64,000 nucleotides of DNA from Guillardia theta CCMP2712. Lineage: Eukaryota; Protista; Cryptophyta. A model generated the notes under the pieces. The model made no database searches and was not told where the DNA came from. It saw nothing but the letters and a program-made list of their open reading frames with translations. The stretch is from the NCBI RefSeq assembly GCF_000315625.1, contig NW_005434639.1, positions 1 to 64,000 of the forward strand, read 5' to 3'. Shown piece by piece: positions 1 to 54,350 of the stretch; the first letter of the stretch is position 1; each line of letters opens with the position of its first letter. The position numbers and the translations under genes were made by a program.

Positions 1-202
1 CCTGCCTCAGATAAAGGGATCCTGCCTCAGATAAAGGGATCCTGCCTCAGATAAAGGGATCCTGCCTCAGATAAAGGGATCCTGCCTCAGATAAAGGGAT
101 CCTGCCTCAGATAAAGGGATCCTGCCTCAGATAAAGGGATCCTGCCTCAGATAAAGGGATCCTGCCTCAGATAAAGGGATCCTGCCTCAGATAAAGGGAT
201 CC
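1..202. repeat. Perfect 20-bp tandem array (CCTGCCTCAGATAAAGGGAT) x10, running off the window start
   Basis: Ten identical units read directly; same unit recurs at 14626-14879; no spacers. Confidence 0.98.
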
Positions 203-222
203 ACTAAACCCTAAACCCTAAA
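202..222 (-). repeat. Short telomeric tract (one CACTAAA variant + 2 CCCTAAA; TTTAGGG on -)
   Basis: cactaaa-ccctaaa-ccctaaa between the 20-mer array and the truncated collagen-like ORF. Confidence 0.9.
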
Positions 223-950
223 TTTTTACCCAACAAAGTTGTTCCATTAGAATTATAAAATTTGAGCTCTCCAGCATTTATTCCATTTGTTCCATTGTCT
301 CCTTTAGGTCCTGCCGCTGGTAAATTTATAGATGCTGATGAAACATTAGCATCTCCTATTTTTCCTAACAATTCTGTACCATCAACATTATAGAATTTTA
401 ATTCTCCTGCGTTTGTTCCTCTTGGAACATTTATAGAAGCTGTAGAAACATTAGAATCACCTATTTTAGCAAGTTCAATGGTTCCATCATAGTTTTTGAA
501 AATTATTTGACCCGCATTTTTTCCATTTGTTCCATTAGTTCCATTAGTTCCACTGTCTCCTTTATCTCCCTTTGGTCCTTGACTTCCAGTGCTTCCAGTA
601 TCTCCTTTATCCCCTTTATCACCTTTGATACCATCGGGTAGTGTTATATCTTGACTATTATAATTATTTAAAGTTATTGTCACATTTCCTGTTCTTGTAT
701 TCTTAAAATTTAGCTGAAATGTTTCAATTGTAGAAATATATCTTTGTTGTGCTTCATCATAATATATTTTAAATATTCCCTGTCTATCTGCTGAATCAAA
801 CAAATCTTTAATGTCTGTCTTAGCCGGCTCATTGTTGATGGTTAAGCTTCGTCTTATATTGTTATTTGTTGAAAGGCTTTGTTGTGTGCTCACTGTTTGA
901 TTATTTACAGTAATAAAAGAACCACCATATAAAATATTATCACATATCAA
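204..950 (-). CDS. Collagen-like (G-X-Y) fibre/tail-type protein, C-terminally truncated by telomere repeats
   Basis: GDKGDKGDTGSTGSQGPKGDKGDSGTNGTNGTNG plus three NAG(E/Q)xxFxNxxGTxxLxKIGD repeats; the third breaks off into telomere-encoded NLGFRV. Confidence 0.75.
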   Translation of the reverse strand: MICDNILYGGSFITVNNQTVSTQQSLSTNNNIRRSLTINNEPAKTDIKDLFDSADRQGIFKIYYDEAQQRYISTIETFQLNFKNTRTGNVTITLNNYNSQDITLPDGIKGDKGDKGDTGSTGSQGPKGDKGDSGTNGTNGTNGKNAGQIIFKNYDGTIELAKIGDSNVSTASINVPRGTNAGELKFYNVDGTELLGKIGDANVSSASINLPAAGPKGDNGTNGINAGELKFYNSNGTTLLGKNLGFRV

Positions 951-2637
951 ATGGTCTAAGTGAAGCCCTCCAGTTATCTTCGTTTTTTACATTGTCAACA
1001 TCTCCATTGTTTATTTTAGAAGCCTTCATCCTCAGATCCGTACACCAGTTTGTAGCATTCATTACAATATTACATATCCCCCTATTAGCTGAGTATCTGC
1101 CATCTTTTAGGATGTAGTTTCTAATGTTATAATTATAAATTACAATTGGATGTAATTGATACCAATTCGCCGTCGGTGGCGTGATATCCATAGCCACCAA
1201 AACACCATTCAGATACACCTTAAATATATCTTTGGATATGCTGAAAGCGTAATGATTCCAATCGTAAAACAATGTTTTATCATTCGCAAAATTATTGTTA
1301 ATGATAACAGACCTCAAATTCTCAACCCTTTGATGTAAATTATTAATATATACAATCTTGACCCGCAGCCCCAAAAATTTATCAGGCAAGGAATCATCAT
1401 CTGAAATAATCCAGTAAAATTCAGTCCCATCATAAAAACCATCGTTGCCATTCTTATTTTCATATTTGATTTGAAAAAGCCTATATTCTTGTGTTCCGTT
1501 GTTTCTTGCCTCGTTCGTGTTGTCAAATCTCCACCAAAAAGAAAGGTTTATGTACTGAGAAAATAAAAGGTCATTTACTATTAAATTTTTATTGCTCTGA
1601 AAATTAAGTCTGTACGTTGATATGTTAAGTTTATACGTATCTTCAACAGTTCCTGTAAATTCAATGTTGTTATAAGATGTATTCAATAGGTTCTTTATTG
1701 ATAAACTTGTAGGACCAATAAAAACATCTCCTTTGACTGGTGACAATGAAAGAGGATATGTTATATTGAAATTATTGTTATTCAAAGCTAACTTATCCGA
1801 GAACGTTAAAGAATTATTGACTGTTAAATTATTTGTATTCACTGAGTTTTTTATTTCATTGTTGATAACATTATATAATATATTAGACTCAGAATATATG
1901 CGATTGTTTAATAGGTTTGAATCAGTTTTTAAATGATTGTATAATATATTTGATTCATTAAGTGTATGCTCATATAATATGTTTGATTCATTAAGTGTAT
2001 GCTCATATAATATGTTTGATTCAGTATATATATAATTGTATAATATGTTTGATTCAGTATATATATAATTGTATAATATGTTTGAAGTATTATTTACTTC
2101 TTGTTTTGTGTATGCGTCGATTATATTTGGAAGGTCTGTAAGCTGAGTATATGAGCTCACTAAGTCCGGAAGGTCTGTAAGCTGAGTGTATGAGCTCACC
2201 AAGTCCGGAAGGTCTGTAAGTCGAGTGTATGAGGTCACTAAATCCGGAAGGTCTGTAAGCTGAGTATAGGAGCTTACTAAATCCGGAAGGTCTGTAAGCT
2301 GCGTGTATGAAGTCACTAAATCAGGTAAATTTATTAATGTTTCATAGTCGATATTTTGTAATTTTACATCTATTTCTGATTTATCATAATAGTTATCTAG
2401 CTCAGCGCTTAGTTCTGTTGTATCTATAAATTTATCATCTGTTTCTTGTTTTGTATATACTGAAAAATCTATCTCTCCTTTATTGTAATAATTCAAAAGC
2501 TCATTATCAACATAAGCTATTATCTCTGCCTTTTGGGCACCTATCTTAGCACCTAAATCATTAGATGTATTTAATAACTCTTGCTGTGATAATTGATAAC
2601 CACGACCAGCAACCCAATTTAAATTATCATAGCTCAT
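940..2637 (-). CDS. Repeat-rich viral fibre/structural-type protein with C-terminal ConA/LamG-like lectin domain
   Basis: 565-aa ORF; 13-aa (TDLPDLVSSYTQL) and 11-aa (ESNILYNYIYT) repeats; ISFWWR...WNHYAFS...KVYLNG-type LamG pattern. Confidence 0.65.
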   Translation of the reverse strand: MSYDNLNWVAGRGYQLSQQELLNTSNDLGAKIGAQKAEIIAYVDNELLNYYNKGEIDFSVYTKQETDDKFIDTTELSAELDNYYDKSEIDVKLQNIDYETLINLPDLVTSYTQLTDLPDLVSSYTQLTDLPDLVTSYTRLTDLPDLVSSYTQLTDLPDLVSSYTQLTDLPNIIDAYTKQEVNNTSNILYNYIYTESNILYNYIYTESNILYEHTLNESNILYEHTLNESNILYNHLKTDSNLLNNRIYSESNILYNVINNEIKNSVNTNNLTVNNSLTFSDKLALNNNNFNITYPLSLSPVKGDVFIGPTSLSIKNLLNTSYNNIEFTGTVEDTYKLNISTYRLNFQSNKNLIVNDLLFSQYINLSFWWRFDNTNEARNNGTQEYRLFQIKYENKNGNDGFYDGTEFYWIISDDDSLPDKFLGLRVKIVYINNLHQRVENLRSVIINNNFANDKTLFYDWNHYAFSISKDIFKVYLNGVLVAMDITPPTANWYQLHPIVIYNYNIRNYILKDGRYSANRGICNIVMNATNWCTDLRMKASKINNGDVDNVKNEDNWRASLRPFDM

Positions 2638-2643
2638 ATTTTA

Positions 2644-2904
2644 TTAATCACTCATATTTAATTTTTTAAGCTCCTCTCTGGCCTTCCTATTGAATTCTTC
2701 CCAAAAATTATTACATTTTATATTATCTTCCATAGTAAAATAAAGCGTGGTCTTTTCATTTGTTATATTAAATTCTTTTGATATCTCAGCATTTTGTTTA
2801 ATTATCTTATTTCTATAATATTCTCTCGACATCTGCTTTTTTTTCTCTATATATATTGGGTCTATTCTGTATTTATTAAAGTTCATTTTATTAAAACAGA
2901 GCAA
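2644..2904 (-). CDS. Small basic hypothetical viral-type protein
   Basis: 86-aa ORF exactly filling the gap between two larger ORFs of the cassette. Confidence 0.45.
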   Translation of the reverse strand: MLCFNKMNFNKYRIDPIYIEKKKQMSREYYRNKIIKQNAEISKEFNITNEKTTLYFTMEDNIKCNNFWEEFNRKAREELKKLNMSD

Positions 2905-2909
2905 AATAA

Positions 2910-3680
2910 ATGAGCAACCCGAGAGGCAGCAAAAACGGAGAGGTCGTTTTTAATTCTAAAAATGACGAAGGCATGTTATGGGATGAGTTCAAAATAAAAT
3001 ATAATGAATACTTAAACACTAGCGCCTTCTATATTATAAGAACCCCTAAAACAATAAATGGAAAAGGTAACCTTATAAAACTTGGTATATCTTCCGTTGG
3101 TTCTTCTGAAATCATAAGGAGGTTATCAGACTATGAAAAATATTATGATGGAGACTTTAGGGTATTACATCTTAGGGTTTGGTATCAGTATGTAAAAGGA
3201 ACAAATCAGGAGGGAGCGCCTCAGGAACGTTTCGAGTTGAAAACTAAGCGAAGGATGAAAGAACTAACATCATCAGCTTATGGTAATGAATGGTATAAGT
3301 CAAATGACTTAAAAACTCTACGCGATGTATTGAAAGAGTTTGATAAAGAAAATGAAGATATAAATTATGTACCACCAGAACGCAATAAGTCGCGTAAGGC
3401 AAAGCAAATATCAACCGATACCCTAGTAAGGGTTAAATATGGAAACAAATATTTTAATGGTGTTATATATAATATATCTGTGAAGGATAATAAACCGTGG
3501 TTTAGTGTTATATTTTTCAAAGACTATAAAATTAATAATAATGATTTAGGAGGATATGACAAGGAAGAGATAAGAGAGGCTATAACCAAATATGAAGATT
3601 GGGAAGAAAAAAACAAAGAACTTTCAAAAAAGCTCAAATCTGAATGGTCTAGGTTTAAAAATAAGGAAGGTATCCATTAA
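2910..3680 (+). CDS. GIY-YIG superfamily (T5orf172/MUG113-like) nuclease with possible C-terminal Tudor-like domain
   Basis: FYIIR...LIKLGIS...RRL..Y...E...GNEWY motif order; C-terminal VRVKYGNKYFNGVI...FSVIFFKDY. Confidence 0.6.
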   Translation: MSNPRGSKNGEVVFNSKNDEGMLWDEFKIKYNEYLNTSAFYIIRTPKTINGKGNLIKLGISSVGSSEIIRRLSDYEKYYDGDFRVLHLRVWYQYVKGTNQEGAPQERFELKTKRRMKELTSSAYGNEWYKSNDLKTLRDVLKEFDKENEDINYVPPERNKSRKAKQISTDTLVRVKYGNKYFNGVIYNISVKDNKPWFSVIFFKDYKINNNDLGGYDKEEIREAITKYEDWEEKNKELSKKLKSEWSRFKNKEGIH

Positions 3681-3760
3681 GTCGGGTCTTATGACATAAT
3701 ATGAAATTTTATCTTCTTCTAAAAGTAAATATACCATTTAATATATTTTGAGATATTAAA

Positions 3761-4132
3761 ATGTCTGAACCTAGAGATAAAGAATTATATGAAAAGATTA
3801 AAAAGAAAATAACAGACAAATATAAGCCCTCAGCATATAGGAGTGGTCTTATTGTAAAAGAATATAAAAGAGAGTATTTTAAGAAACATAAGAATAATAA
3901 TTCTTACACAGGTGATAAGAAAAAAAGTAACCTTAAAAGATGGTTTAATGAGAAATGGAGGAATCAGAGAGGAGAGGTAGGATATGATAAGAAAGGTGAC
4001 ATATACCGACCGACAAAAAGAATTAACAGTAAGACCCCTATAACAATAAAAGAGCTTTCACCCTCACAAATAAAGAGGGCTCAAGAAGTAAAGAAGGCCA
4101 CAGGAAGAGTTAAGAATTTTTCTAAGTTATGA
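3761..4132 (+). CDS. Small basic protein of a large-DNA-virus family (DUF5872-like)
   Basis: P.DKELYEKIK...PSAYRSGLIVKEYK...LKRWFNEKW...YRPTKRINSKTPIT.EL; family recalled from memory, not searched. Confidence 0.6.
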   Translation: MSEPRDKELYEKIKKKITDKYKPSAYRSGLIVKEYKREYFKKHKNNNSYTGDKKKSNLKRWFNEKWRNQRGEVGYDKKGDIYRPTKRINSKTPITIKELSPSQIKRAQEVKKATGRVKNFSKL

Positions 4133-4159
4133 GTGCGTGCCCGCCTCAGGAGATGGCCA

Positions 4160-4243
4160 TTTTTCGTTTTTTTCTTGCGGGAATCGAACCCGCGCGCTTA
4201 TCGCCGTAACGATGGCATATTGGCCACTCGACTATTAGGTCTT
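4160..4243 (-). ncRNA. tRNA-derived/Pol III-type element (A box + B box with T-arm), no intact cloverleaf
   Basis: Minus strand TAGTCGAGTGG (A box) ... GCGGGTTCGATTCCCGC (T-arm/B box); TATATA ~25-30 nt upstream; A-rich run downstream. Confidence 0.6.
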
Positions 4244-4648
4244 TTAGGGGGTAGGGGTGGTAGTCCTATATAAAATAAATTCTCATGCGTATTTTTGGGA
4301 GGGTACGCATAAGATACACACAGAGACAATGCGAAAAAATTTTTCGCATGAGAATGATAAGAAAATATTTTATTTTTCTTGAATTTCACACATCACATGT
4401 GAAAAAACACAAAACTTCACACTGAAAATCACAAAAAACAAAAAAATTTCAATCAAAACACATCAAGACCATAAGCCCAACGGAGTGACAGAGAGCCCCA
4501 TCATTCATTCCCCTTCCCCCCCCAGTCGCCCACCTCTTCCCTCCATGACCCTGAGCTGCGCCTGTCTCCTTGGTGCTAGGCTTGTTTTCCTTCCCTGCCT
4601 GTGCTCCATAGGTGGCTTGCCCATGAGCCGCGCCTGCCCCCCATCGGA

Positions 4649-6709
4649 CTAGGTCGACTCGCTTCCCCTTCTTGCCGTCCATAGCATGTGTTGCACCTCC
4701 AGCAGTTGCTTGATTGCTGCTGTCTTGATGCCTTCCCATTCCGTGTCTTCCACCCTTAGCACCCTGAAATTCTCATGCCATTCCCTTTCCATGATCGATC
4801 CTTTCACTCCTGCTATGAATGTTGCTTGTTCAACTTCATGGTCAGGTAGCAAAACTGTGATTTCTGCTCGTAGGGGGGCATATTTCTCTTCCTTTTCCTG
4901 AAATTTCTTCTTCAGGCATTCCAGGCTTGTTTGTTCGACTCCGTCATATTCCAATGTCCTTGCAAATTCGATGAGGACAATGCGTTTGATGCTTGCAAAG
5001 TAGCAGCAACCGTCAGGTATCCAGTGCCCTTCTCGGTGCATTGAAGTCCCCATCGCTTCCATCACGATGCGTATTGGAGTGTCCCACCATGAATTGACCT
5101 GTACCCTTTGTTTCCTCCAACTCTGCTGCAGTCTTACCTTGATCTTCTTCGTGACTTCATTGTGTGCTTTTTGAATCATATCTTGAAACTGCTTGCACGC
5201 TAGCTGAACATGACCCCAGGTTTCTTCTCGGTCTGGACAGTGAGGACAACATGGTGAGTTAGTCTTCCCCCATTGAAAGAGCTTCTTCCTCGTCGGTGCT
5301 GAGAAGGTGATCGCTTGGATAGCTGTTCGCGTAACTGACCCTTCGCATTGTTTGAACCCTCTCCCTAGTAAATCTCTTCCCACATGCATTTCGAGCATGA
5401 ATTTCTCTGTCAAGGTGAGGTCTCCCGCTCGAATCCTTGCCACCATTGTCTGTTGTCTGATAATGTAGTCCCATTTCTTCAAGCGATCGAATCCTGATGT
5501 AGGATTTTCTTCTCCTGCAATGATGAATTCCATTGGACTATCGTAGATTGCTTTCTCCCATCCCGAGGCAAATGTTTGTTTTGCTTGCTTGGCCATTTCC
5601 TTTGCCTCTTGAATGTTTCTATGAGATTCTTTTGCTAGTTGGAGTCGGATCCTGATTCCCCTCCCTTCGAGTTTCCTCATGCAAGTGAGTAACCGATCAT
5701 GTAAGTCCTCCAGCAGTTCGTCTTCGTATCGCATGGTATCCATTCGCAACGTATTTGTCATAAAGCGGTGGAAACGTGTGGACTGGTACATTATTGTGAC
5801 TTGATTTCCCCTTTTGATCTGTATTCCTTCCTCAAGGACATGTTGCAGAAGTAAACCGATTGCGATTGTGTTCGCTCGGATGATGCTGCACTTCCCATTG
5901 ATTTTCATCCCTCCTCCTGACGTCATCTCTTTTTGTTGGAGAACATATCCTACTCGCATGGATCTGTTTTTTCTGCCCTGCATGATGTCTCCTTCAATAG
6001 CTGCTGTGAAATGCCTTCCGCCTTGATGATCGCTGCACGGCTGGATCTGATCCCTTCGTCTGTTACACAGCTCCTCATACGTTGGGAGGATGTTGTCCTG
6101 AAGCTGGACTCGTAAGTATGTTGGGAGTGTGTGCCTAACTAGTATCCATAACTCCTCTGCAGTCTTCATCAAACACCTATTCCCTGTTTGCCAGAAGTTT
6201 GCTGCATAAGCTATTTGAGCGCCTTTCGGGACCCGGCTGATAATTTCAAAACCTTCTGGTATCTCATCAATGTTATTCTTCCATCCTATCAGAATGACAT
6301 GTATTGTATCCAGGATTTGTTCACGAAATCTCTCTTGTTTGTCCATCCAAACCACCACTCTGTGCAGTTCCCTTGCTCTCTTCTTGTCCAGAGCCTGGGG
6401 ATGTGTGTGTAGGGTAGGCCAGTTACGAAATGTACTGATGTCGCATGCTGTAATCTCTGCTAGATGTTGTAAAAACTCGTATGCCAATGGTTGTGTTGTT
6501 TCTTGGCGAACCTCTGATACTACCTCCTCGAGTTGTTGCCACCATGCTGTAGCTTCTGTTTCGCCGTCGTCCAATGCATTAACTATTTCCAGCAGCAGAT
6601 GGATGCTTTGATTGCAGTCTCTTCGGTTATTACCGTCCTCTTCCCTTGTTGCAGATGTGAAGGGAGCCGAGTCCAGTGACGCTTCCAACCATTCTATTGG
6701 TGGATCCAC
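4649..6709 (-). CDS. ORF2 C-terminal fragment: degenerate RNase H-like domain, CCHC zinc knuckle, restriction-like (PD-(D/E)xK) endonuclease
   Basis: CPHC...ETWGHVQLAC, KAHNEV, WIPDG...VLIEFAR, EKEEKY match the RLE-type non-LTR signature. Confidence 0.85.
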   Translation of the reverse strand: MDPPIEWLEASLDSAPFTSATREEDGNNRRDCNQSIHLLLEIVNALDDGETEATAWWQQLEEVVSEVRQETTQPLAYEFLQHLAEITACDISTFRNWPTLHTHPQALDKKRARELHRVVVWMDKQERFREQILDTIHVILIGWKNNIDEIPEGFEIISRVPKGAQIAYAANFWQTGNRCLMKTAEELWILVRHTLPTYLRVQLQDNILPTYEELCNRRRDQIQPCSDHQGGRHFTAAIEGDIMQGRKNRSMRVGYVLQQKEMTSGGGMKINGKCSIIRANTIAIGLLLQHVLEEGIQIKRGNQVTIMYQSTRFHRFMTNTLRMDTMRYEDELLEDLHDRLLTCMRKLEGRGIRIRLQLAKESHRNIQEAKEMAKQAKQTFASGWEKAIYDSPMEFIIAGEENPTSGFDRLKKWDYIIRQQTMVARIRAGDLTLTEKFMLEMHVGRDLLGRGFKQCEGSVTRTAIQAITFSAPTRKKLFQWGKTNSPCCPHCPDREETWGHVQLACKQFQDMIQKAHNEVTKKIKVRLQQSWRKQRVQVNSWWDTPIRIVMEAMGTSMHREGHWIPDGCCYFASIKRIVLIEFARTLEYDGVEQTSLECLKKKFQEKEEKYAPLRAEITVLLPDHEVEQATFIAGVKGSIMEREWHENFRVLRVEDTEWEGIKTAAIKQLLEVQHMLWTARRGSEST

Positions 6710-6747
6710 GGTCTTGCTTTCTTCAATTTGAGATCGCTCAAAGATGG

Positions 6748-12405: not shown

Positions 12406-14552
12406 TAGGCTTGCGCTGCTGGGAAGGAGTCAAGCGACATCTCTTCCGATTCTGCCGCCATGCTCCCAGCCTCGGGTACATCTTCCATTCGAGCGTCTTT
12501 CATCTGTAGCTCACTGCTCAAAACAAATTTCAATTCGTTTCTATCTCCCAGCATTCCTACGAGGGAGAGCGCCGTTTCCTCCAGGAATTTATTCAAAGCA
12601 ATGAAGAGAAGGTCAGTTTTCAAGGGCTTCTCCTCATTTGGTGCGAAAGCGCTGCTCTTGCGTTTCGCTACCTTCCACGTATGCTTGCCTGCAATCATCC
12701 TGACTCGTTCGCGCAGTTGCTTGCTCACGGCATTCTCTGCCGCGTTGGCACCCTTATCAGCCCACTCTTGTAGCGTGGGGAAGGATGCATTTCCTGGGCT
12801 CTCCGGAGCCATCTCTTGCACCGCGTCATCAAGATGGAGTTGAAGCTGCCCTTGCTGTTGCAGCTCGCTCCTAGTTACGTCAGCAATAGTTTCCTTAAGT
12901 TCTTCGACGACCACGTCCGTTCCCGCATCTGGGAGGTTGGTCTCGTTGATAATTGAACTGAGCTCGATCTCTTTCCACACAGTTCCCTCTGCTCTGGTCC
13001 CCGTCGTTTGTGACCTGGCCTCAGGGTTAGACTGATCGCGAGTTGCCTGAGGCGACACTTGGAGGTTCAGACTGCTCGCTGTCGTTTGGATTTCAACTGT
13101 GCCTTGCCAGCAGAGGAGCTGTGTGGGGAATTCAGCCATCATCTTTCTTGCACTACTTTCACTGCGTAGCCGGAGAATGATACCAGACCCATCCCAGATC
13201 CCTGTTTCTGGATCGCATTGGAGGTGGATCCGTTGGAGATCTTTTTCCACCTGTGGATCAAAGCAAGCGACAGCCCTCCGAATGTTTCGGATGACTTTTG
13301 CTCTGCCCGTTTCGTCACTTGCACAGATTTTTTCGATCTCATTTCGGGAGAACTTCCCTGACGGCACAGGAGAGGAGATTTGTACCGAGTACAGCATCTC
13401 TGCTCCCGTTGCCATTGCCGTGCCCTCTTGTCGCACCGCATTCTTCATATTCTTGTGCAGCGCCGTTGCTTCCATCTGCACTGAGAACCATTTCAGTATT
13501 TTGTCATTCTCTGAGACCAGTCCCAAAGTGACTCCTGCACGATCCTTTCCATGTCGATCGAATGCTTGAAGAACGATGTCCGCTGCTTCAAGGCTCGAGC
13601 ACGTTGCGATCCAGTCGACCTCTCTGTTCTGGTTGACTATTTCTATTCCTACCGCAGCGAACACCTTCTTTGGCGGTAGGTTCCTCTTGGGGGGGAGGTT
13701 CACTGTCATTCCCGCGTTTGGGATCAGATCAATAATCGCTAATCCCTGCTTCAGGCATAGCTGCCTGTAGATCTCACATATGTCACCTGTGCTCGAATCG
13801 TTGAGCATCAGGAGTTGGGCCACCTCAGCTAGGATTCCAACTCTGCTCATGTTCTCCTTCTTTGGCCGCATCTTGAACGAGATCGGTGGGTTGGCTGCTG
13901 GGTTCACTGCTAGAATCCTCCTGCCTGCCACCTTGAAGGTACCATCTCCTTTCCAGAGTTTCTCAGCCGCCTCATTGCGGACAAATGTGATCACTGCTGG
14001 GATCTCCGCTGCCTGCACAAGGTCAGGCTTCAAGGGAGCCTTGAAGATCAGGCTCCTGCTGTCTTGCGTCTGATCGACGATCAAGCCTTGCTCTTCAAGC
14101 TTGAGGCATAAGTTTTCCACCTGTCTGGAAAAGTATGCAGGGATCCCAAGTACCTTCATGGTAATCGTCTGCACATTGGTGCCCTGATCATCATATGATC
14201 TGGCCTCCATCTGCCTTTGTCTGTCAGCTTGGAACTCTGACAGGTACCACTGCTTGACATCGTCACCCCACTGCCTGAGCCCTTTCGGATTCTCCAGTGA
14301 CGAGGGTTCAGCGAAGCTGCATGTCTGACTGATGGCTTCGGCTAAGGCTTCCAAGGAAATTTCTTTTGCTTTCAGAGCTTTGCTCGTCCTGCTTTTGGGG
14401 TTCTGCCTTGCGAATTCATCCAGTCTCCGCATCAGTTCGGCTGATGACGGCATCGTTGCAGCTTCCGTCTGCCTCTTGAGGTAGCTGGAGGTACGGTACT
14501 GCACGATCTCGTCAGGGTTCACAATAGATATTGGCCACATGTTTCGAAGCAT
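12405..14552 (-). CDS. Retroelement ORF1 (715 aa) with RRM-like region
   Basis: Intact ORF upstream of ORF2; MKVLGIP...AVITFVRNEAAEKL...VAGRRILAV fits an RRM pattern; paralog at 17392-18462. Confidence 0.8.
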   Translation of the reverse strand: MLRNMWPISIVNPDEIVQYRTSSYLKRQTEAATMPSSAELMRRLDEFARQNPKSRTSKALKAKEISLEALAEAISQTCSFAEPSSLENPKGLRQWGDDVKQWYLSEFQADRQRQMEARSYDDQGTNVQTITMKVLGIPAYFSRQVENLCLKLEEQGLIVDQTQDSRSLIFKAPLKPDLVQAAEIPAVITFVRNEAAEKLWKGDGTFKVAGRRILAVNPAANPPISFKMRPKKENMSRVGILAEVAQLLMLNDSSTGDICEIYRQLCLKQGLAIIDLIPNAGMTVNLPPKRNLPPKKVFAAVGIEIVNQNREVDWIATCSSLEAADIVLQAFDRHGKDRAGVTLGLVSENDKILKWFSVQMEATALHKNMKNAVRQEGTAMATGAEMLYSVQISSPVPSGKFSRNEIEKICASDETGRAKVIRNIRRAVACFDPQVEKDLQRIHLQCDPETGIWDGSGIILRLRSESSARKMMAEFPTQLLCWQGTVEIQTTASSLNLQVSPQATRDQSNPEARSQTTGTRAEGTVWKEIELSSIINETNLPDAGTDVVVEELKETIADVTRSELQQQGQLQLHLDDAVQEMAPESPGNASFPTLQEWADKGANAAENAVSKQLRERVRMIAGKHTWKVAKRKSSAFAPNEEKPLKTDLLFIALNKFLEETALSLVGMLGDRNELKFVLSSELQMKDARMEDVPEAGSMAAESEEMSLDSFPAAQA

Positions 14553-14625
14553 TCTCGATGGTTTCCCGAGCTTCCTGCGTTCCTGGCGACTCTTGCTCTA
14601 CCACGCAGGGACCCCGCTGATCTGC

Positions 14626-14785
14626 ATGCCTCAGATAAAGGGATCCTGCCTCAGATAAAGGGATCCTGCCTCAGATAAAGGGATCCTCTCAGATAAAGGG
14701 ATCCTGCCTCAGATAAAGGGATCCTGCCTCAGATAAAGGGATCCTGCCTCAGATAAAGGGATCCTGCCTCAGATAAAGGGATCCT
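14626..14785. repeat. 20-bp tandem array (~8 units, one 18-bp variant) abutting the 5' end of unit A
   Basis: Same unit as 1-200; variant cctctcagataaagggat at 14685-14702. Confidence 0.97.
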
Positions 14786-14825
14786 CCTAAACCCTAAACC
14801 CTAAACCCTAAACCCTTAAACCTTA
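14786..14825 (-). repeat. Telomeric tract inside the 20-mer array
   Basis: (CCCTAAA)n with cccttaaa/ccttaa variants. Confidence 0.95.
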
Positions 14826-14879
14826 ATCCTGCCTCAGATAAAGGGATCCTGCCTCAGATAAAGGGATCCTGCCTCAGAT
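14826..14879. repeat. Second block of the 20-bp repeat (~2.7 units)
   Basis: Read directly, between two telomeric tracts. Confidence 0.95.
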
Positions 14880-14947
14880 CCCTAAACCCTAAACCCTAAA
14901 CCCTAAACCCTAAACCCTAAACCCTAAACCCTAAACCCTAAACCCTA
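14880..14947 (-). repeat. Interstitial telomeric tract (CCCTAAA) x~9.5
   Basis: Perfect heptamers, followed on + by (ATT)n to ~14963. Confidence 0.97.
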
Positions 14948-15125
14948 TTATTATTATTATTATGTGAGTTTATTAGAATGCTAGAATGTTGCTCGGCCTC
15001 GTTGTGGGCTTATGCAATTTGATCCTAGTCTAAAGAGGCGCTCGAGCACTGGGAGTACACGGCCTACAATGCGAACCCTGCTTCTGAGGCGTCTTTCTAC
15101 TTTCTACTTCTGCTGTCTTCTCTTG

Positions 15126-15298
15126 GCTTCCTCAGCCTCAGTCAGGAGAGTTGCCTCTCCTCACCTTGGCCTTCGGTCACCACCTACTCTACCTCCATTC
15201 AGCTTCCTCAGCCTCAGTCAGAAGAGTTGCCTCTCCTCACCTTGGCCTTCGGTCGCCACCTACTCCTCCTCCATTCAGCTTCCTCAGCCTCAGTCAGG
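15126..15298. repeat. 76-bp tandem repeat, ~2.3 copies
   Basis: gcttcctcagcctcagtcag... starts at 15126, 15202 and 15278. Confidence 0.9.
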
Positions 15299-15629
15299 TA
15301 CGGGCTCGCCCCGTCTTCTTCCTCGCCCTCGCCTTGCTCTTCCTCCATGTCTTCCTCTTCTTCGCCATCTTCCCTCATCTCCACCCGCAGTCGGTCCTTC
15401 TTGTCCACCCATAGCGTTGCCTTTCTCAATTGACCTTGGAGCTCTAAAACGTTTCGCGGTGAGGGTGGTAGATTCAAATCCACGCATACCACGCCTCATG
15501 TGGGGGCGGGGTGGGTCTTCCGACCGTGTTCCGAATTCAAATCACGAAGAGCCAAGCAGAACTTTTTCAGGGGTAGGGTCTTCTTGAGTACAATTTCTTG
15601 GTACCAGTTAGTACAGTCCGAACCATGTG

Positions 15630-16518
15630 ACTTTAATAACTTCCTCTATGACAGAAGGAATAAGAAGTACTTGCTTGTGGACTTTGGGCTGGCAGAGAAA
15701 CAAATGCAGTCATCAGGCCGCAGCATCGGCAACATCTTGCCCTGTGAGGTTTCTACGGCCAGCTCTCGCTCCTCGCGGAATCAAAAGGAGCAGGAGAAGC
15801 TAGAGATGGCGCAGCAGATGGCGAAGAGGCGGATCATGTTGGGCGTCAGCAAGACGAACGCATCGGTGACAGTGAGGAACTCAGGGGTCAAATTCGAACG
15901 TCCAGTCAAACGCGCGGGAACTCGGGGATACCGAGCGCCCGAAGTGCTCATGGGCATGCAGTGCCAGACCACAGCAGTGGACGTGTGGGCTGCTGGGGTA
16001 GTACTGCTTACCCTGCTGTGCCGCACGACACAGTTCCAATGGTTCCAGTATAACGACATAGTCACGGCAACGATGGAGATCTACGGGTACGCTCTTTGTG
16101 TACCTTGGAAGTGCGCTTGTCTGACTGTCTGAGCAGCTTGCGCATGTACATCAAGAGCATGGATGCTGTGTGGAAGCTCCTCGACGTTAAGGTAAAATTG
16201 TTGTCGTCGGCGTTGTTGTATCAAGAGGATGACGATGAGGTGATATGGGTTGGCCGCGAGGCCTGAGGTTGCTAACTTGATGTCATTCAGATTCCACCAT
16301 TGGAACTGCATCTCAGCTATGCCCGCGGTTTCAAGCAAACATGGCGGACCTTGTCAAGCTCCCTGGGCGCGCATGCGGGATGCAAGGACTGGCTGGAGGT
16401 GGATGAGAAACATGGGATCTGGGACTTCCTCAACTGCTGCCTCAACATCGATCCCCGCACGAGGATTACAGCACTGGAGGCTCTGAAGCATCCCTTCCTC
16501 ATTAGTGCTGTCAAGTAA
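15630..16518 (+). pseudogene. CDC7: 5'-truncated Cdc7-like Ser/Thr kinase (C-lobe only), two introns retained
   Basis: NNFLY...YLLVDFGLAE, long insert, RAGTRGYRAPEVL, QTTAVDVWAAG, RITALEALKHPF; no Gly-loop, VAIK or HRD upstream. Confidence 0.75.
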
Positions 16519-17391
16519 ACCGTCTCTACCCGTAGCTTTCTCCTTCCTCTCCTCTCATGTCCTCCTCGCCCTCCTGCCTTCCTCGCTAGTGGTCTTGAGT
16601 AAACACGGTCTCTCCTCCGGCATCTCCTCTCGCAGCGATCAGGCATATCAACTAGCCTGGCCTCCCAGGCGTCCATTTCCCTTCCAACCCCTCCCCTCTC
16701 CTTCCCCCAGCCTCTCAAACTCCTCACCTCCTCACAAATGACACCGCCATATTACAATAGGTTGGGAGAAGCCTCAAAAAACGCAATCATGGCAAAGCAA
16801 CAGGAAGTCTCTTGAAATATGTTTCTTATTCAACCGACGAAGCATTCAGGTAAAGGAAGCTAGGGCGTCAACACAACAAGGAAAAATTTCGATGAGATGC
16901 ATACCTTACACATTCAACCTACTATAGGTGTGATTCTCAGCCAAGAATTGAGCTGTTTGATCTCAGTACTTGCCTGGCAGTTTCAGGAGTTAGTATTGAG
17001 GGGCCATGGTCCTTGACTGCGCTCAGCAGCTGAGCAAACAGTCCCTGAGTACATTGGGAGTAGTGGGATAGGGAAGAGACGGGGCAAGTGTGAGGTCGTT
17101 TACAAGTGTTTTAGATTGATACGAGAAGTTTGCACTACCCCCTACCCCTCAACACGGGCTGGAGGCCGTTGGAAAGATTCAAATCATTTGAATACCTACC
17201 CCGAGCCTCCTCATGATTATTTAGTCAACTATACACGCCTATTCATATCAAATAGAGGAAGGTTTTGCTCAACATTGCCCTTCTCGTCTTGGATGGCCCG
17301 GCAGCCCCTGGCAACGAAAAAGGTACATAAATTGACGGAGCAAACATTTTTAGCTCAATTTTCTCTTGCCGCTTTAATTTGACTAAAACTA

Positions 17392-18462
17392 CTATGAGAA
17401 CCACCCTGGTTGACTGATCCGACAAGGATACGGAACGGCAACGCTAGGCTTCAGCGAGCAGGCCAGCACATCATTCGCCTCTGGGCAGCTCGAGGAGACG
17501 ATCCACTCCACCTCCCTCTGTCTCCAGATGACGTTGGCCCCTACAGCGATGAAGCCTTTCTGACCTAAGCCTTTGTGGACTTGCTGTCCTGGCGCCCCAG
17601 CGACCAGCATGCCTGCCAGCGGCTGGAGTTGGACCGCTGCAAGGGACTGGCGCAGCAGCTGATAGCGATAGACGGCAGCTATCTCAGCCGTTGTCATGCC
17701 GCCCAAGGTTAGCAGGTGAGTCAGCTCTGCCAAGCTGCCCCCTTTGCCCCAGGGTCCTCTCTTGGCTCGAATCTTGAAAGATCGATCGTGCACGATGCTC
17801 ACATGTACAGCTGTGAACTTGCGACCATCGATCGCGAAGTCCTCTCTTCCCTGCCAGAGCTTCTCCGCTTGTGCATTGCGGAGGAAGGAAACAGTCACCG
17901 GGATCTCCTCAGCACTCGCTATCTCGGGTCTATACGGAGCCTTCCACATGATTGCTTTACTCTCTTGCACTGAGTCTACGATCAGTCCGATCTCTTCAAA
18001 TTTCTTCTTCAGCTTTTCTTCATGGTTGACATACACCGAGGAGATGCCCAGGAGAGTCATGGAGATGAAGGAAGTCACCTCGTTGCCTGCTGAGGCGGTG
18101 TATGTCTCGACCTTCTCCTTCTTGGCTTCTTCAATCTGCTGCATAAACCACTCTCTGGATGCGTCACTCCATCCAGTCATCGCTTCTTGCAGAAACTCAC
18201 GTCGTGCCTGCTGACATGTCGAGCGGATGGCTTCTGCGATAGCGTCGGGGGTGCATCCCTCCACAGCCTTGCAAGCCTGGGCTGTCCTGCTGTTCGGATA
18301 ACGCTTCGCGAAGCTCTTCACCCTCTCGACGAGATCAGCTTCGAGGACAGAGGCATCCACAAGTCCGCTCTGCGTGTATTGGCATGATCTCCGATACAGC
18401 AGGTTGCGAACATTTTCATCATACTGAAGAACCATACTTAGAAAGCTATTTGAAGTATACAA
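17392..18462 (-). CDS. C-terminally truncated ORF1 of a second, divergent family of the same retroelement (unit B)
   Basis: Collinear with 12405-14552: FAKRYPNSRT/FARQNPKSRT, GLIVD, KAP.P, RN..AEKLW.G, REV(E/D)WI. Confidence 0.85.
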   Translation of the reverse strand: MYTSNSFLSMVLQYDENVRNLLYRRSCQYTQSGLVDASVLEADLVERVKSFAKRYPNSRTAQACKAVEGCTPDAIAEAIRSTCQQARREFLQEAMTGWSDASREWFMQQIEEAKKEKVETYTASAGNEVTSFISMTLLGISSVYVNHEEKLKKKFEEIGLIVDSVQESKAIMWKAPYRPEIASAEEIPVTVSFLRNAQAEKLWQGREDFAIDGRKFTAVHVSIVHDRSFKIRAKRGPWGKGGSLAELTHLLTLGGMTTAEIAAVYRYQLLRQSLAAVQLQPLAGMLVAGAPGQQVHKGLGQKGFIAVGANVIWRQREVEWIVSSSCPEANDVLACSLKPSVAVPYPCRISQPGWFS

Positions 18463-18508
18463 ACCTCTTGCTTGCAGCTTCCTTGGCGCCCTGGCGGCTT
18501 CCCCTACA

Positions 18509-18550
18509 CCTGACGAGGAGCCATGCTGCCTGACGAGGAGCCATGCTGCC
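18509..18550. repeat. Different 20-bp tandem repeat (CCTGACGAGGAGCCATGCTG) x2 at the 5' end of unit B
   Basis: Two exact copies between the ORF1 leader and the telomeric tract. Confidence 0.93.
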
Positions 18551-18647
18551 CCTAAACCCTAAACCCTAAACCCTAAACCCGAAACCCGAAACCCTAAACC
18601 CGAAACCCGAAACCCGAAATCCTAAACCCGAAACTCTAAACCCGAAA
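18550..18647 (-). repeat. Telomeric tract degenerating proximally (CCCTAAA to CCCGAAA/TCCTAAA/CTCTAAA)
   Basis: ~14 heptamers: perfect distally, variant proximally. Confidence 0.95.
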
Positions 18648-19606
18648 GGTTGTTGACGTCAAATCCTCCGATCTCTAGCGCTCGCACTCAGAAGAAGCAG
18701 TCTCGCCGCAAACCTGGTGCTATAGGCTCTTTTCGCTCCTGGGCTGTACGTCAATTTTTGTTTCAGTTGTGTCGCTTGGGTGATGAGGTGTCACTGAGGT
18801 GCTCGGATTCAGCTGGACTCATCTATGCACAAGGATGTGAGTGGTCTGACGCCTGGGCCTCCAGAATTGAACATGCTGCAGATGAAGTCACTTGGCACCC
18901 CGGCACTTCCTGGAGAGGCATCGACCTCGAGCAGCTGGCCTCCTACTGGTGCCCGCGATCTGCTTTGCTGTATTCTTGAGATGTGAGCCATTGATATCAA
19001 CATCTTTTACATTCTTAAACGCTTGCGGATCGTCTGGTGTGGGTGACAAGGTATCTAGTTGGAAGGGGGAGAGGCTTGTTGCTGGCCGCATGTAGAGACC
19101 AACTTTACAGCAGTGAAAGTTTTGCTAGGAGTTTTTGTGCCTTCATCGTCCTATTCTTCCACGTCGCTTTCTCCCTCTACATTTTCGAACCCGCACGCTC
19201 ACAGTGATGGAATCGTCATCGTAGGAGAGTTTCTCAGTTTTTGGGCTGGGGGCATATGACTTTCAAAACTCAGTATTTCCCTCAGAATGATGTGCATTTT
19301 CAACCAGCAAAGCGGGTTTCCATTAGTCGGTGACACTAATTTTGATTTTAAATGTCATTTCGAGGGAAACAAGATAATTTCGCCTGCTCAAGGGTCCAAT
19401 TTCTCATGCAGGGACTTATTGCACACTCAGTTCATTAAGACCGCGTTATAGTGACAAGACTGCTAAAGTAGTCTGAACATCAAGAAATACCAGCCCATAA
19501 TTGTGGCAAAATCCTCTAAGTTTGATGCCGAAGAATGCATCAGATGTTTGGAACTATCGATTGTTCTTCTATCTCCACGGAGATCCAGACAAGACGACAA
19601 GACGAG

Positions 19607-39852: not shown

Positions 39853-40908
<1,056 letters not shown>

Positions 40909-50636: not shown

Positions 50637-54350
<3,714 letters not shown>

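What the first reader, a model, noticed from the sequence alone, without database searches (positions are those of the whole stretch)
1..18650. Candidate new system: chromosome end extended by stacked retroelement units, each built as TTTAGGG tract > element-specific 20-mer array > ORF1(+ORF2) > cargo
Seen: on the G-rich (-) strand the pattern telomere tract > 20-bp array occurs at 18647-18509, 14947-14626 and 222-1. At the first two sites it leads straight into homologous ORF1s, both with their 5' ends facing the centromere. Each unit ends in unrelated cargo (CDC7 fragment; virus-like genes) joined to the next telomere tract. Established: SART/TRAS insert into telomeric repeats, while HeT-A/TART and Athena-type Penelope elements attach with the 5' end distal, the opposite polarity. 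I know of no described telomeric element with dual endonucleases and family-specific 20-mer leaders. Inference: a telomere-specialised retrotransposon lineage that alternates with telomerase and moves foreign DNA to chromosome ends.
Basis: partly seen in the sequence, partly recalled or inferred. Interest (0 to 1): 0.95.

Follow-up and report, generated by a model that had tools for sequence, protein, structure and literature searches.

The report
Telomere-targeting retrotransposon stack in Guillardia
The left end of this window is a chromosome end of the cryptophyte alga Guillardia theta in which LINE-type retrotransposons that insert only into the TTTAGGG telomere repeat have piled up head to tail; this is a known way of life for such elements, found here in a new host group and a new element lineage, and the "cargo" consists of separate accidents, not part of the elements.

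Summary
Three TTTAGGG tracts (18647-18550, 14947-14880, 222-202, G-strand = minus) are each followed by a short tandem leader, and two lead into ORF1s that are 36% identical. The organism is Guillardia theta or a very close relative. The same architecture recurs on four scaffolds of the 2012 reference assembly and on independent metagenome contigs. Two of those contigs carry an intact element: ORF1 plus a 2575-aa ORF2 with Ulp1 protease, APE endonuclease, RT, zinc finger and an R2-like restriction-like endonuclease. All families share an invariant 3' box and a trinucleotide tail joined at one fixed phase to GGGTTTAGGG. Their 5' junctions vary and their sense strand is the G-strand. This fits SART1-like target-primed insertion into double-stranded telomere repeats by a Dualen-like LINE lineage, with an ORF1-only partner family. 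Six units cut at arbitrary points on the distal side are capped by new telomere repeats, which indicates erosion and telomerase healing. The "cargo" idea fails. The CDC7 fragment lies in a nested TIR-bounded multicopy transposon. The giant-virus-like DNA is joined to a 3'-truncated element and is itself broken and healed. This is a new variant of a known kind.

The parts
1..202 (-). Leader array A, at least 10 perfect 20-nt units. It is the 5' end of a further A-type element whose body would lie beyond the window start (the distal side).
   Evidence: the same unit precedes ORF1A in L001, L003 and L004
202..222 (-). Three TTTAGGG repeats added directly onto broken virus-like DNA (a de novo, 'healed' end). 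They later became the target of the distal A insertion.
   Evidence: the junction reads ...GGGTAAAAA|TTTAGGG and cuts the collagen-like ORF 204-950
223..4465 (.). AT-rich (30% GC) giant-virus-like DNA fragment. It holds a collagen-like ORF 204-950(-), a 565-aa repeat protein 940-2637(-), ORFs 2644-2904(-) and 2910-3680(+), a DUF5872 ORF 3761-4132(+), and a tRNA-like remnant at about 4170-4245(-). It is not part of the retroelement.
   Evidence: no tRNA was called; none of the three ORFs tested by exact sequence (940-2637, 2910-3680, 3761-4132) is on record
4466..4505 (.). About 40 nt of GC-rich filler at the junction between the truncated A 3' UTR and the virus-like DNA.
   Evidence: homology to other A copies stops at about 4506
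4506..14626 (-). Element A, an autonomous Dualen-like LINE of about 10.1 kb. This copy lacks the last ~300 bp (3' box and tail) and has a frameshifted ORF2.
   Evidence: 99.1% identical to the L002 copy, 15 indels of 1-29 bp
12405..14552 (-). ORF1A, 715 aa and intact. It has no Pfam domain. The fold model is weak and its best, non-significant matches are RRM proteins.
   Evidence: (94% identical to GUITHDRAFT_114135)
11377..12405 (-). ORF2 piece with the Ulp1 (C48) cysteine protease domain.
   Evidence: E 3.6e-8 in the intact homologue
10083..11492 (-). ORF2 piece with the APE-type endonuclease.
   Evidence: weak sequence matches; the columns invariant across all six sequences are Y, GDxNA, D and DH, and the N-terminal N and E are present in the Guillardia-type sequences
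6748..9366 (-). ORF2 piece with the reverse transcriptase.
   Evidence: RVT_1, E 1.5e-28; best PDB matches are R2, E 1e-22, then human L1 ORF2p
4649..6709 (-). ORF2 C-terminal piece: linker, CCHC zinc finger and restriction-like endonuclease (RLE).
   Evidence: Foldseek top 7 hits are R2 proteins, E 1.5e-9, TMq 0.57-0.60
14627..14785 (-). Leader array A of the full A element, about 8 units.
14786..14826 (-). About 5.7 telomere repeats, the first ones irregular. They cap the remnant of an older A copy.
14827..14879 (-). 2.6 leader-A units: all that is left of an earlier A insertion, eroded down to its leader.
14880..14947 (-). TTTAGGG x9.7, the target tract distal to element B.
14948..15409 (-). 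Element B 3' UTR, with the shared 3' box TCTAATAAACTCA (14965-14977) and an (ATA)n tail (about 14948-14964) joined to GGGTTTAGGG. It contains a 76-bp tandem repeat at 15126-15297.
15410..17448 (+). Nested 2.03-kb insertion bounded by 14-nt inverted repeats (15412-15425 and 17433-17446). It carries a CDC7-like kinase fragment (15500-16132, 16300-16518) and is a deletion derivative of a multicopy repeat of at least 5.9 kb.
17449..18508 (-). Element B 5' part: the untranslated region and the N-terminal 343 aa of ORF1B. The C-terminal half (1.04 kb) is deleted relative to the full 2.7-kb B units in L001 and L003.
18509..18550 (-). Leader of this B copy, a 20-nt unit x2.1.
18550..18647 (-). Most proximal telomere tract, 14 units mixing TTTAGGG with TTTCGGG variants. 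It abuts unique chromosomal DNA at 18648.

Best explanation
Window 1-18647 is the distal part of a Guillardia theta chromosome end. It has been colonised by a lineage of non-LTR (LINE) retrotransposons that insert only into the double-stranded (TTTAGGG)n telomere repeat.

The autonomous member (A, about 10.4 kb when complete) encodes ORF1 and one very large ORF2. ORF2 carries a Ulp1-type cysteine protease, an APE endonuclease, a reverse transcriptase, a CCHC zinc finger and an R2-like restriction-like endonuclease. This is the dual-endonuclease architecture known only from the Dualen group. A second family (B, about 2.7 kb) has only an ORF1 plus the same 3' terminal box, and is presumably copied in trans. 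At least five further leader types are seen in the reference loci, several of them followed by diverged ORF1 or ORF2 sequences.

Inferred mechanism: an element endonuclease nicks the C-rich strand at one fixed phase of the repeat. The freed 3' OH primes reverse transcription from the shared 3' box and trinucleotide tail (target-primed reverse transcription). The sense strand therefore always lies on the G-strand, with the 5' end towards the centromere and the 3' end towards the tip, and telomere repeats remain on both sides. The 5' junction is made imprecisely.

The distal end then erodes. Telomerase re-caps whatever is exposed, and the new tract is hit again, so a head-to-tail stack builds up.

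The 16-26-nt leaders are tandem amplifications of the element's extreme 5' end. I infer that they act as a repeated internal promoter, which an element landing in promoter-less telomere DNA needs.

Shown here: the anatomy, the domains, the junction phases, the recurrence in independent assemblies, and the truncated, capped copies. Inferred: which endonuclease cuts which strand, trans-mobilisation of B, and the function of the leaders.
For: Organism: ORF1A is 94% identical to a G. theta protein, and the kinase ORF is 100% identical over the aligned 61% of its length to GUITHDRAFT_99883.

Recurrence: the same tel > leader > ORF1 units occur in L001-L004 (2012 Sanger reference) and in L005/L006/L039 (ENA and JGI metagenomes). 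L005 and L006 each hold an intact element with a 2575-aa ORF2, flanked by TTTAGGG on both sides. In L005 unique DNA is followed by telomere, A, telomere and B.

Domains: Ulp1 E 3.6e-8 and RT E 7e-29. In the APE alignment the columns Y, GDxNA, D and DH are invariant across all six sequences, and the N-terminal N and E are present in the Guillardia-type sequences. For the RLE, the AF2 model has pLDDT 89, the top 7 Foldseek hits are R2 proteins, and the CCHC/PD/K columns are conserved.

3' junction: an invariant box CTA..A.TCTAATAAACTCA plus an (ATA)n or (ACT)n tail is always followed by GGGTTTAGGG, in all 12 tails aligned (the window and L001-L006) and in L039. 5' junctions vary in phase.

Polarity: it is uniform within each stack. 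In L002, L003 (main stack) and L004 the G-strand points to the scaffold end, and in the window it points to position 1.

Erosion and healing: copies cut on the distal side at arbitrary points are capped directly by telomere repeats. These are L001 12549 (in Ulp1), L002 7292 (in ORF1B), L003(-) 3842, L004 15142, window 14826 (in the leader) and window 222.

Recent activity is suggested by 99.1% identity between the window and L002 A copies.

The polarity and junction logic match SART1, whose tail is joined to AGG of TTAGG (PMC7265360).
Against: Only about eight loci were examined, and no genome-wide census was possible. Two reference scaffolds hold a second stack in inverted orientation: converging in L001 at about 13324 and diverging in L003 at about 3842-5521. 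These may be real rearrangements or Sanger misassemblies.

One A fragment in L001 is 5'-truncated and abuts a chromodomain (Gypsy-like) sequence rather than telomere repeats.

The APE match is below Pfam's threshold. No RNase H domain was detected, although more distant relatives have one. The RT was not placed in a phylogeny with named clades.

The window's A copy is dead. No transcript, cleavage or retrotransposition data exist. No conserved RNA structure was found in the shared 3' end.
Confidence: 0.8

Rival explanations
1. Each unit is a composite 'telomere > leader > ORF1(+ORF2) > cargo', and the elements carry foreign DNA (host gene pieces, viral genes) to chromosome ends, for example by 3' transduction or template switching.
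For: In the window both units are followed distally by unrelated DNA before the next telomere tract. The virus-like DNA ends in AAAAA before the telomere repeats, which could be a short poly(A).
Against: In the other copies examined whose 3' end is preserved, the unit ends in the conserved 3' box and tail directly on GGGTTTAGGG, with no cargo. The CDC7 piece lies inside element B, upstream of B's intact 3' UTR. It is antisense, is bounded by 14-nt inverted repeats (2 matches in the window, 0.05 expected), and has 97-99% identical copies at internal genomic sites that end at the same terminal repeat. That describes a nested DNA-transposon insertion. The A copy next to the viral DNA lacks its own 3' box, so it could not have primed TPRT by the normal route.
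Confidence: 0.07
2. Assembly artefact. The stack, or at least the virus-like segment, is a chimeric join of repeats, contaminant reads and telomere-containing reads.
For: Subtelomeric repeats are hard to assemble. The reference scaffolds show inverted stacks and an N gap next to a stack fragment (L069). None of the three virus-like ORFs tested by exact sequence (940-2637, 2910-3680, 3761-4132) is on record in any public assembly searched.
Against: The tel > leader > ORF1 ... 3' box > tel organisation is reproduced in a Sanger assembly and in two unrelated short-read metagenome assemblies. The virus-like DNA is flanked on both sides by Guillardia-specific sequence (the A 3' UTR on one side, telomere plus leader A on the other), so two independent chimeric joins would be needed.
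Confidence: 0.05
3. The stack is mainly a product of recombination (break-induced replication, unequal exchange, subtelomeric duplication) acting on a few ancient insertions. There is no continuing telomere-specific retrotransposition.
For: Families are mosaic. Leader F in L002 is followed at 8291 by B positions 1229-2689, and the same B truncation point recurs. Inverted stacks exist. MoTeR arrays are known to expand by break-induced replication (PMC7367193).
Against: The 3' junctions are at one fixed phase while the 5' junctions vary. Telomere tract lengths and leader copy numbers differ between units. Intact ORFs are kept in relatives that are 84% identical, and copies within the genome are 99% identical. 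All of this points to repeated independent TPRT events. Recombination probably contributes as well.
Confidence: 0.08

Closest known systems
SART1 (and TRAS1) of Bombyx mori, telomere-repeat-specific LINEs of the R1 clade
   Same: They insert into double-stranded telomere repeats at one fixed phase. The SART1 sense strand is the G-strand, so its 3' tail is joined to ...AGG of the repeat and its 5' end faces the centromere (PMC7265360). They coexist with telomerase-type repeats and form arrays.
   Different: SART/TRAS belong to the R1 clade and have a single APE endonuclease, a poly(A) tail and gag-like zinc knuckles in ORF1. The Guillardia element has APE plus an R2-like RLE plus a Ulp1 protease in a 2575-aa ORF2, an (ATA)n/(ACT)n tail after a conserved box, and tandem 5' leaders. 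The host is a cryptophyte with a TTTAGGG repeat.
MoTeR1/MoTeR2 (Magnaporthe) and FoTeR (Fusarium), telomere-targeted CRE-like elements
   Same: They form head-to-tail arrays separated by short telomere tracts. An autonomous element is paired with a defective partner that shares its ends. The distal ends are truncated and healed by de novo telomere formation. Other transposons insert into the arrays. Tandem repeats are concentrated at the 5' end (PMC7367193, PMC12857005).
   Different: The fungal elements lie with the 5' end nearest the chromosome tip, which is the opposite polarity (PMC7367193). They have a single RLE and no APE, no ORF1, and their 5' repeats are telomere-like variants.
HeT-A / TART / TAHRE of Drosophila
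   Same: A gag(ORF1)-only element works alongside RT-encoding elements, stacked head to tail at chromosome ends. The A/B pair here looks like a convergent version.
   Different: The Drosophila elements attach to the chromosome end itself with the 3' end proximal. They replace telomerase and belong to the Jockey clade. Here telomerase repeats persist between units and the polarity is reversed.
Dualen/RandI LINEs (Chlamydomonas reinhardtii; also annotated as abundant in cryptophyte genomes)
   Same: Dualen is the only LINE group reported to combine APE and RLE in one protein, and it also carries a cysteine protease (PMC9977147, PMC4640811). 'LINE/Dualen' repeats are reported as expanded in cryptophytes, with G. 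theta named as the exception (PMC12747079).
   Different: The described Dualens insert dispersedly with long target duplications. They carry a Josephin-type protease and an RNase H (PMC9977147). Here the protease is Ulp1-type (as in NeSL/Utopia), no RNase H was detected, an ORF1 is present, and the target is the telomere repeat.
Zepp (Chlorella), GilM/GilT (Giardia), Tx1-1_ACar, Athena/Terminon PLEs
   Same: These are the other telomere-associated retroelements listed in the 2023 survey (PMC10088271).
   Different: They belong to different clades (L1-like, unclassified, Tx1, Penelope-like). That survey assigns the telomeric LINEs to four clades (CRE, L1-like, R1, Jockey), none of them Dualen. 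The RT here is LINE-type, with R2 and L1 as best PDB matches, not Penelope-like.

Membership tests
Non-LTR (LINE) retrotransposon | LINE-type reverse transcriptase | tested here: met
   RVT_1 at E 1.5e-28 to 7e-29. The best solved relatives are R2 (E 1e-22) and human L1 ORF2p (E 4e-14).
Non-LTR (LINE) retrotransposon | No terminal repeats; a defined 3' end with a simple-repeat tail; a variable 5' junction | tested here: met
   Conserved 3' box plus an (ATA)n/(ACT)n tail. 5' junction phases vary. No LTR-like repeats in the self-comparison.
Dualen group | APE-type endonuclease N-terminal to the RT | tested here: met
   Pfam Exo_endo_phos scores only E 0.002-0.003, below threshold. In the APE alignment Y, GDxNA, D and DH are invariant across all six sequences, and the N-terminal N and E are present in the Guillardia-type sequences. 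The five best PDB sequence hits are L1 endonucleases.
Dualen group | Restriction-like (PD-(D/E)xK) endonuclease with a CCHC finger C-terminal to the RT, in the same protein | tested here: met
   AF2 model pLDDT 89. The Foldseek top 7 are R2 proteins (E 1.5e-9 to 3e-4), followed by PD-(D/E)xK cap-snatching nucleases. CCHC, PD, R and K..Y columns are invariant or at least 90% conserved across 30 sequences, and an acidic E of the LE motif is in the consensus.
Dualen group | RNase H domain between the RT and the RLE | tested here: not met
   No Pfam or PDB match in the Guillardia-type ORF2, and no similarity to the RNase H region of relative P0094. More distant relatives that share the C-terminal domain do have RNase H.
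Dualen group | Cysteine protease domain (Josephin-type in Chlamydomonas Dualen) | tested here: inconclusive
   A cysteine protease is present, but it is Ulp1/C48-type at the N-terminus, as in NeSL/Utopia (PMC4640811). Relative P0094 also has Ulp1.
Dualen group | RT groups with Dualen/RandI in a phylogeny of LINE clades | not tested
   No named Dualen reference sequences (Repbase) were available in the tools. There is only the indirect observation that R2 and L1 are about equally close.
Telomere-repeat-specific LINE (SART/TRAS type) | 3' end joined to the telomere repeat at one fixed phase | tested here: met
   All 12 tails aligned (the window and L001-L006), and L039, read ...TA|GGGTTTAGGG.
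Telomere-repeat-specific LINE (SART/TRAS type) | Telomere repeats on both sides of full-length copies; constant orientation relative to the repeat | tested here: met
   L005, L006 and the window units. The sense strand is the G-strand in every copy.
Telomere-repeat-specific LINE (SART/TRAS type) | Copies confined to telomeric repeats genome-wide | tested here: inconclusive
   All 8 loci fetched through ORF1 or the 3' box are telomere-associated. Three of the four reference loci run to scaffold ends with outward polarity. L001 is 13 kb from a scaffold end with converging stacks, and no whole-genome census was possible.
Telomere-repeat-specific LINE (SART/TRAS type) | Element endonuclease cleaves the telomere repeat specifically | not testable with these tools
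   Needs biochemistry.
HeT-A/TART-type or Athena-type end attachment | 3' end proximal and 5' end distal, primed from the chromosome's 3' overhang | tested here: not met
   5' ends are proximal in every stack.

The most novel reading that the evidence does not exclude
The short tandem leaders are not ordinary 5'-UTR repeats. On this reading the element's own reverse transcriptase makes them by reiterative copying of the last ~20 nt of its RNA template at the end of each insertion, a telomerase-like repeat-addition step. The lineage, together with its ORF1-only partner, would then be a co-opted second telomere-maintenance system in cryptophytes that also stabilises broken ends that have captured foreign DNA.
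Probability: 0.1. Interest if true: 0.85.

Novelty: new variant of a known kind. Interest (0 to 1): 0.62.

Why it matters
Telomere-specialised LINEs are known from insects, a few fungi, Giardia, Chlorella and a lizard. A 2023 survey assigns them to four LINE clades (PMC10088271). This finding adds a fifth lineage, dual-endonuclease and Dualen-like, in a fifth major eukaryotic group (Cryptista).

The partnership of an autonomous element with an ORF1-only element converges on Drosophila HeT-A/TART. The insertion logic converges on silkworm SART1.

It offers a natural system in which to ask what each of the two endonucleases does during target-primed reverse transcription. It also allows study of how elements landing in promoter-less telomere DNA get transcribed, and of how erosion, telomerase healing and retrotransposition interact. 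It gives a site-specific integrase-like activity for the plant-type TTTAGGG repeat.

For genome annotators, it explains the interstitial TTTAGGG tracts and the many 'hypothetical proteins' at G. theta scaffold ends.

Tried and rejected
- Exact-protein look-ups of window ORFs (ORF1A, ORF1B and three virus-like ORFs) found nothing.
Of these, 56 are chance matches in AT-rich prokaryote-like contigs. Only L023 (= L006) and L039 are real, and both are followed by telomere repeats. The pattern was too short for that collection.
- Searches of viral contigs with the 565-aa and 256-aa virus-like proteins found no relatives. The DUF5872 hits show no synteny with the window.
- ARAGORN and Rfam do not call the tRNA-like stretch at about 4170-4245.
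- Sequence searches of the ORF2 C-terminus against PDB and Pfam were blank. Only the fold comparison revealed the RLE.
- No RNase H could be found.
- The ORF1 model is poor (pLDDT 64) and its fold matches (RRM proteins, E at least 0.006) are not significant.
- RNAalifold finds no shared structure in the last 90 nt of the 3' ends.
- I first thought the CDC7 piece might come from the kinase gene at 44497-45162. It does not: the two share only generic kinase similarity.
- I considered spliced-leader relics as the origin of the 20-mers. I dropped this because the unit is the element's own 5' end and is single-copy in relatives.
- The alignment of leader units across families uses rotations that I chose and sequences of only 20 nt. 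It is suggestive only.
- No sequence here was taken for human.

Full report
OBSERVATION

TTTAGGG/CCCTAAA repeats occur at only three places in the window: 202-222, 14786-14826 plus 14880-14947, and 18550-18647. A 21-mer probe gives 14 matches where none is expected by chance.

Read on the G-rich minus strand, each tract runs straight into a tandem 20-mer. CCTGCCTCAGATAAAGGGAT occurs x10 perfect at 1-202 and x12.5 at 14627-14879. CCTGACGAGGAGCCATGCTG occurs x2.1 at 18509-18550.

Downstream of the second and third leaders lie ORFs 12405-14552 and 17392-18462, which are 36% identical over 294 residues (E 4e-55). The first 4.4 kb is 30% GC against about 50% elsewhere.

ORGANISM

ORF1A is 94% identical to a hypothetical protein of Guillardia theta CCMP2712. 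The kinase ORF at 15500-16132 is 100% identical to GUITHDRAFT_99883 over the aligned 61% of its length. The window is G. theta or something very close to it.

THE ELEMENT

Between 14626 and about 4506 on the minus strand lies a LINE that I call A. It has:
- ORF1 (715 aa);
- pieces of an ORF2 with Ulp1 protease, APE endonuclease and RT;
- a C-terminal piece with a zinc finger.

Two metagenome contigs (L005 from ENA, L006 from JGI; ORF1 84% identical) carry the intact version: ORF1 of 717-719 aa and a single ORF2 of 2575 aa.

I searched the C-terminal 700 residues against 1.84 billion representative proteins and aligned 30 relatives. The invariant or at least 90% conserved columns include a CCHC finger followed by PD, R and K..Y, and an acidic E of the LE motif appears in the consensus. 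An AlphaFold model from that alignment (pLDDT 89) matches the R2 retrotransposon proteins as its top seven PDB hits (E 1.5e-9, TM 0.57-0.60). PD-(D/E)xK cap-snatching nucleases come next.

The APE domain is weak by Pfam. In the alignment of six sequences, the columns Y, GDxNA, D and DH are invariant. The N-terminal N and E are present in the Guillardia-type sequences. Its best PDB sequence hits are L1 endonucleases.

The element therefore has two endonucleases, the hallmark of the Dualen group (PMC9977147, PMC4640811). More distant relatives with the same C-terminal domain combine Ulp1 or APE with RT and RNase H. In the Guillardia element itself I could not detect RNase H.

The window's A copy is 99.1% identical to the copy in L002. 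It differs from it by 15 indels of 1-29 bp, mostly short tandem duplications or deletions, and these break ORF2.

UNITS AND JUNCTIONS

Fetching the G. theta reference loci that encode ORF1 relatives (L001-L004) showed the same organisation many times over.

Every G-strand telomere tract of two or more repeats is followed by the 5' end of an element. In most cases that 5' end begins with a tandem array of a 16-26-nt unit particular to the downstream family. I counted leader types A, A', B1-B4, C, D, F, G and H. The tract at L002 6523 is followed by a GC-rich sequence with no evident tandem array.

In the 84%-identical relatives, the A and B leaders are single-copy. The arrays are therefore amplifications of the extreme 5' end.

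At the other end, all families share an invariant box, CTA(A/G)(G/C)A(G/T)TCTAATAAACTCA, and a trinucleotide tail, (ATA)n or (ACT)n. The tail always ends ...TA and is always followed by GGGTTTAGGG.

A precise 3' junction, variable 5' junctions and a constant strand are the signature of target-primed reverse transcription at a sequence-specific nick. The nick here would lie in the C-strand, about CCC^TAAA.

This is the geometry of SART1, whose tail is joined to AGG of TTAGG (PMC7265360). It explains why the 5' ends face the centromere. No new mechanism is needed for the polarity.

FAMILY B

Family B is a 2.7-kb unit consisting of a leader, a 715-aa ORF1 and a 3' UTR with the shared box. Examples are L001 4506-7197, L003 7393-9540 and L004 12513-15135. 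It has no ORF2 and presumably borrows A's enzymes, as HeT-A is thought to do with TART and MoTeR2 with MoTeR1 (PMC7367193).

EROSION AND HEALING

Six units are cut at arbitrary internal points on their distal (3') side and capped directly by telomere repeats:

| Locus and position | Where the unit is cut |
|---|---|
| L001 12549 | within the Ulp1 region |
| L002 7292 | within ORF1B |
| L003(-) 3842 | within the B 3' UTR |
| L004 15142 | within the B 3' UTR |
| window 14826 | an A copy reduced to 2.6 leader units |
| window 222 | within the virus-like DNA |

TPRT does not truncate 3' ends. Terminal erosion followed by telomerase addition does.

CARGO

The CDC7 fragment is genuine CDC7-like sequence. 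It lies in a 2.03-kb insertion (15410-17448) inside element B, upstream of B's intact 3' UTR and antisense to it.

- The insertion is bounded by 14-nt inverted repeats, which are the only two matches in the window where 0.05 are expected.
- Three other copies, 97-99% identical, lie at internal positions of 0.7-1.3-Mb scaffolds. They extend at least 4 kb further on one side and stop at the same terminal repeat on the other.
- It is therefore a nested, internally deleted DNA-transposon-like repeat that carries a kinase fragment.
- The same B copy also has a 1.04-kb internal deletion of ORF1B.

The virus-like DNA (223-4465) includes a DUF5872 gene at E 9e-34, whose best relative is in a giant-virus MAG at 55% identity.

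- It is joined through about 40 nt of filler to an A copy that has lost its last ~300 bp, including the 3' box.
- Its far end is cut inside a collagen-like ORF by three telomere repeats.
- The simplest readings are that an eroded end captured a DNA fragment, or that a larger viral insertion was later broken and healed.
- Neither reading makes the DNA cargo of the retroelement. I cannot exclude a misassembly of this segment without reads, but two independent chimeric joins to Guillardia-specific sequence would be required.

CAVEATS

- L001 contains two stacks that converge head-on at about 13324. L003 has a second stack pointing into the scaffold. These are either real inverted rearrangements or Sanger-era misjoins.
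- One 5'-truncated A fragment abuts a chromodomain sequence.
- I saw only about eight loci. The single metagenome scan was mostly noise.
- No paper in the searchable library describes telomeric LINEs in cryptophytes. Repbase reports and subscription journals could not be searched.

COMPARISON AND VERDICT

The closest analogue by mechanism is SART1. The closest by array dynamics (head-to-tail arrays, a defective partner, truncation and healing, nested transposons, 5' tandem repeats) are MoTeR and FoTeR, which have the opposite polarity (PMC7367193, PMC12857005). By protein architecture the element is Dualen-like. That clade is absent from the list of telomeric LINE clades (PMC10088271).

I rate this a new variant of a known kind. 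It is real, coherent and of clear interest to people who work on transposons and telomeres, but it is not a categorically new system.

Noticed in passing
window 4170-4245 (-): A tRNA-like stretch with a canonical T-arm (GCGGG TTCGATT CCCGC) and a D-loop-like GTCGAGTGG lies at the inner edge of the virus-like DNA. Neither ARAGORN nor Rfam calls it. It may be a tRNA remnant of the virus or an old attachment site.
   Followed up: partly
window 5803-14626 compared with L002 9931-18761: The two A copies are 99.1% identical in aligned bases but differ by 15 indels of 1-29 bp. Most are short tandem duplications or deletions between short direct repeats. This slippage-like mutation pattern resembles the process that would amplify the 5' leaders.
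   Followed up: partly
L001 12800-14200 and 14150-18190: Two element stacks of opposite orientation meet head-on at about 13324. A family-C ORF1 fragment is joined there to an inverted APE fragment. This is either a telomere-telomere fusion relic or an assembly chimera. The inverted A fragment is 5'-truncated and abuts a chromodomain (Gypsy-integrase-like) coding sequence at 18200-18330(-).
   Followed up: partly
L069 2200-2386 (JH992995.1, next to an N gap): Another leader type, (AGGAAATAAGGAACCTGCC)n, with 2.5 telomere repeats and a B 3' end, is scaffolded next to a copy of the CDC7-carrying repeat in the interior of a 688-kb scaffold. It could be a mis-scaffolded representation of a locus like the window's.
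   Followed up: no
L070 1-5860, L071 22-5898: The CDC7-fragment-carrying repeat is at least 5.9 kb long with internal tandem repeats of about 137 bp. Its left end and any transposase were not found. G. theta gene models GUITHDRAFT_99883 and GUITHDRAFT_107937 are probably parts of this repeat rather than host kinase genes.
   Followed up: partly
window 1909-2322: Tandem repeats of 33/66 bp and 39 bp inside the 565-aa virus-like ORF encode reiterated peptides (LTDLPDLVSSYTQ and ESNILYNYIYT types), as in viral fibre proteins. The neighbouring collagen-like ORF matches phage tail-fibre families only through its collagen repeats.
   Followed up: partly
window 18550-18647: The most proximal telomere tract is a mix of TTTAGGG and the variant TTTCGGG (plus single TTTAGAG and TTTAGGA units). 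The tracts between elements are nearly pure. This is consistent with the proximal tract being the oldest.
   Followed up: no
window 20700-64000: The chromosome body next to the stack is rich in microsatellites and low-complexity coding repeats, for example (CTCTG)44 at 40675-40894 and (GCTCCT)17 at 53316-53417. It holds ordinary-looking gene pieces: ubiquitin plus AWS domains at 28869-31994(-), ankyrin repeats at 39853-40605(-), a kinase at 44497-45162(+) and MORN repeats at 59728-60651(-).
   Followed up: partly
L005, L006, L039 (ENA ERZ930064; JGI 3300014720 and Ga0172372): Intact elements whose ORF1 is 84% identical to the G. theta one occur in environmental metagenomes. An uncultured close relative of Guillardia therefore carries an apparently active version with single-copy leaders.
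   Followed up: partly
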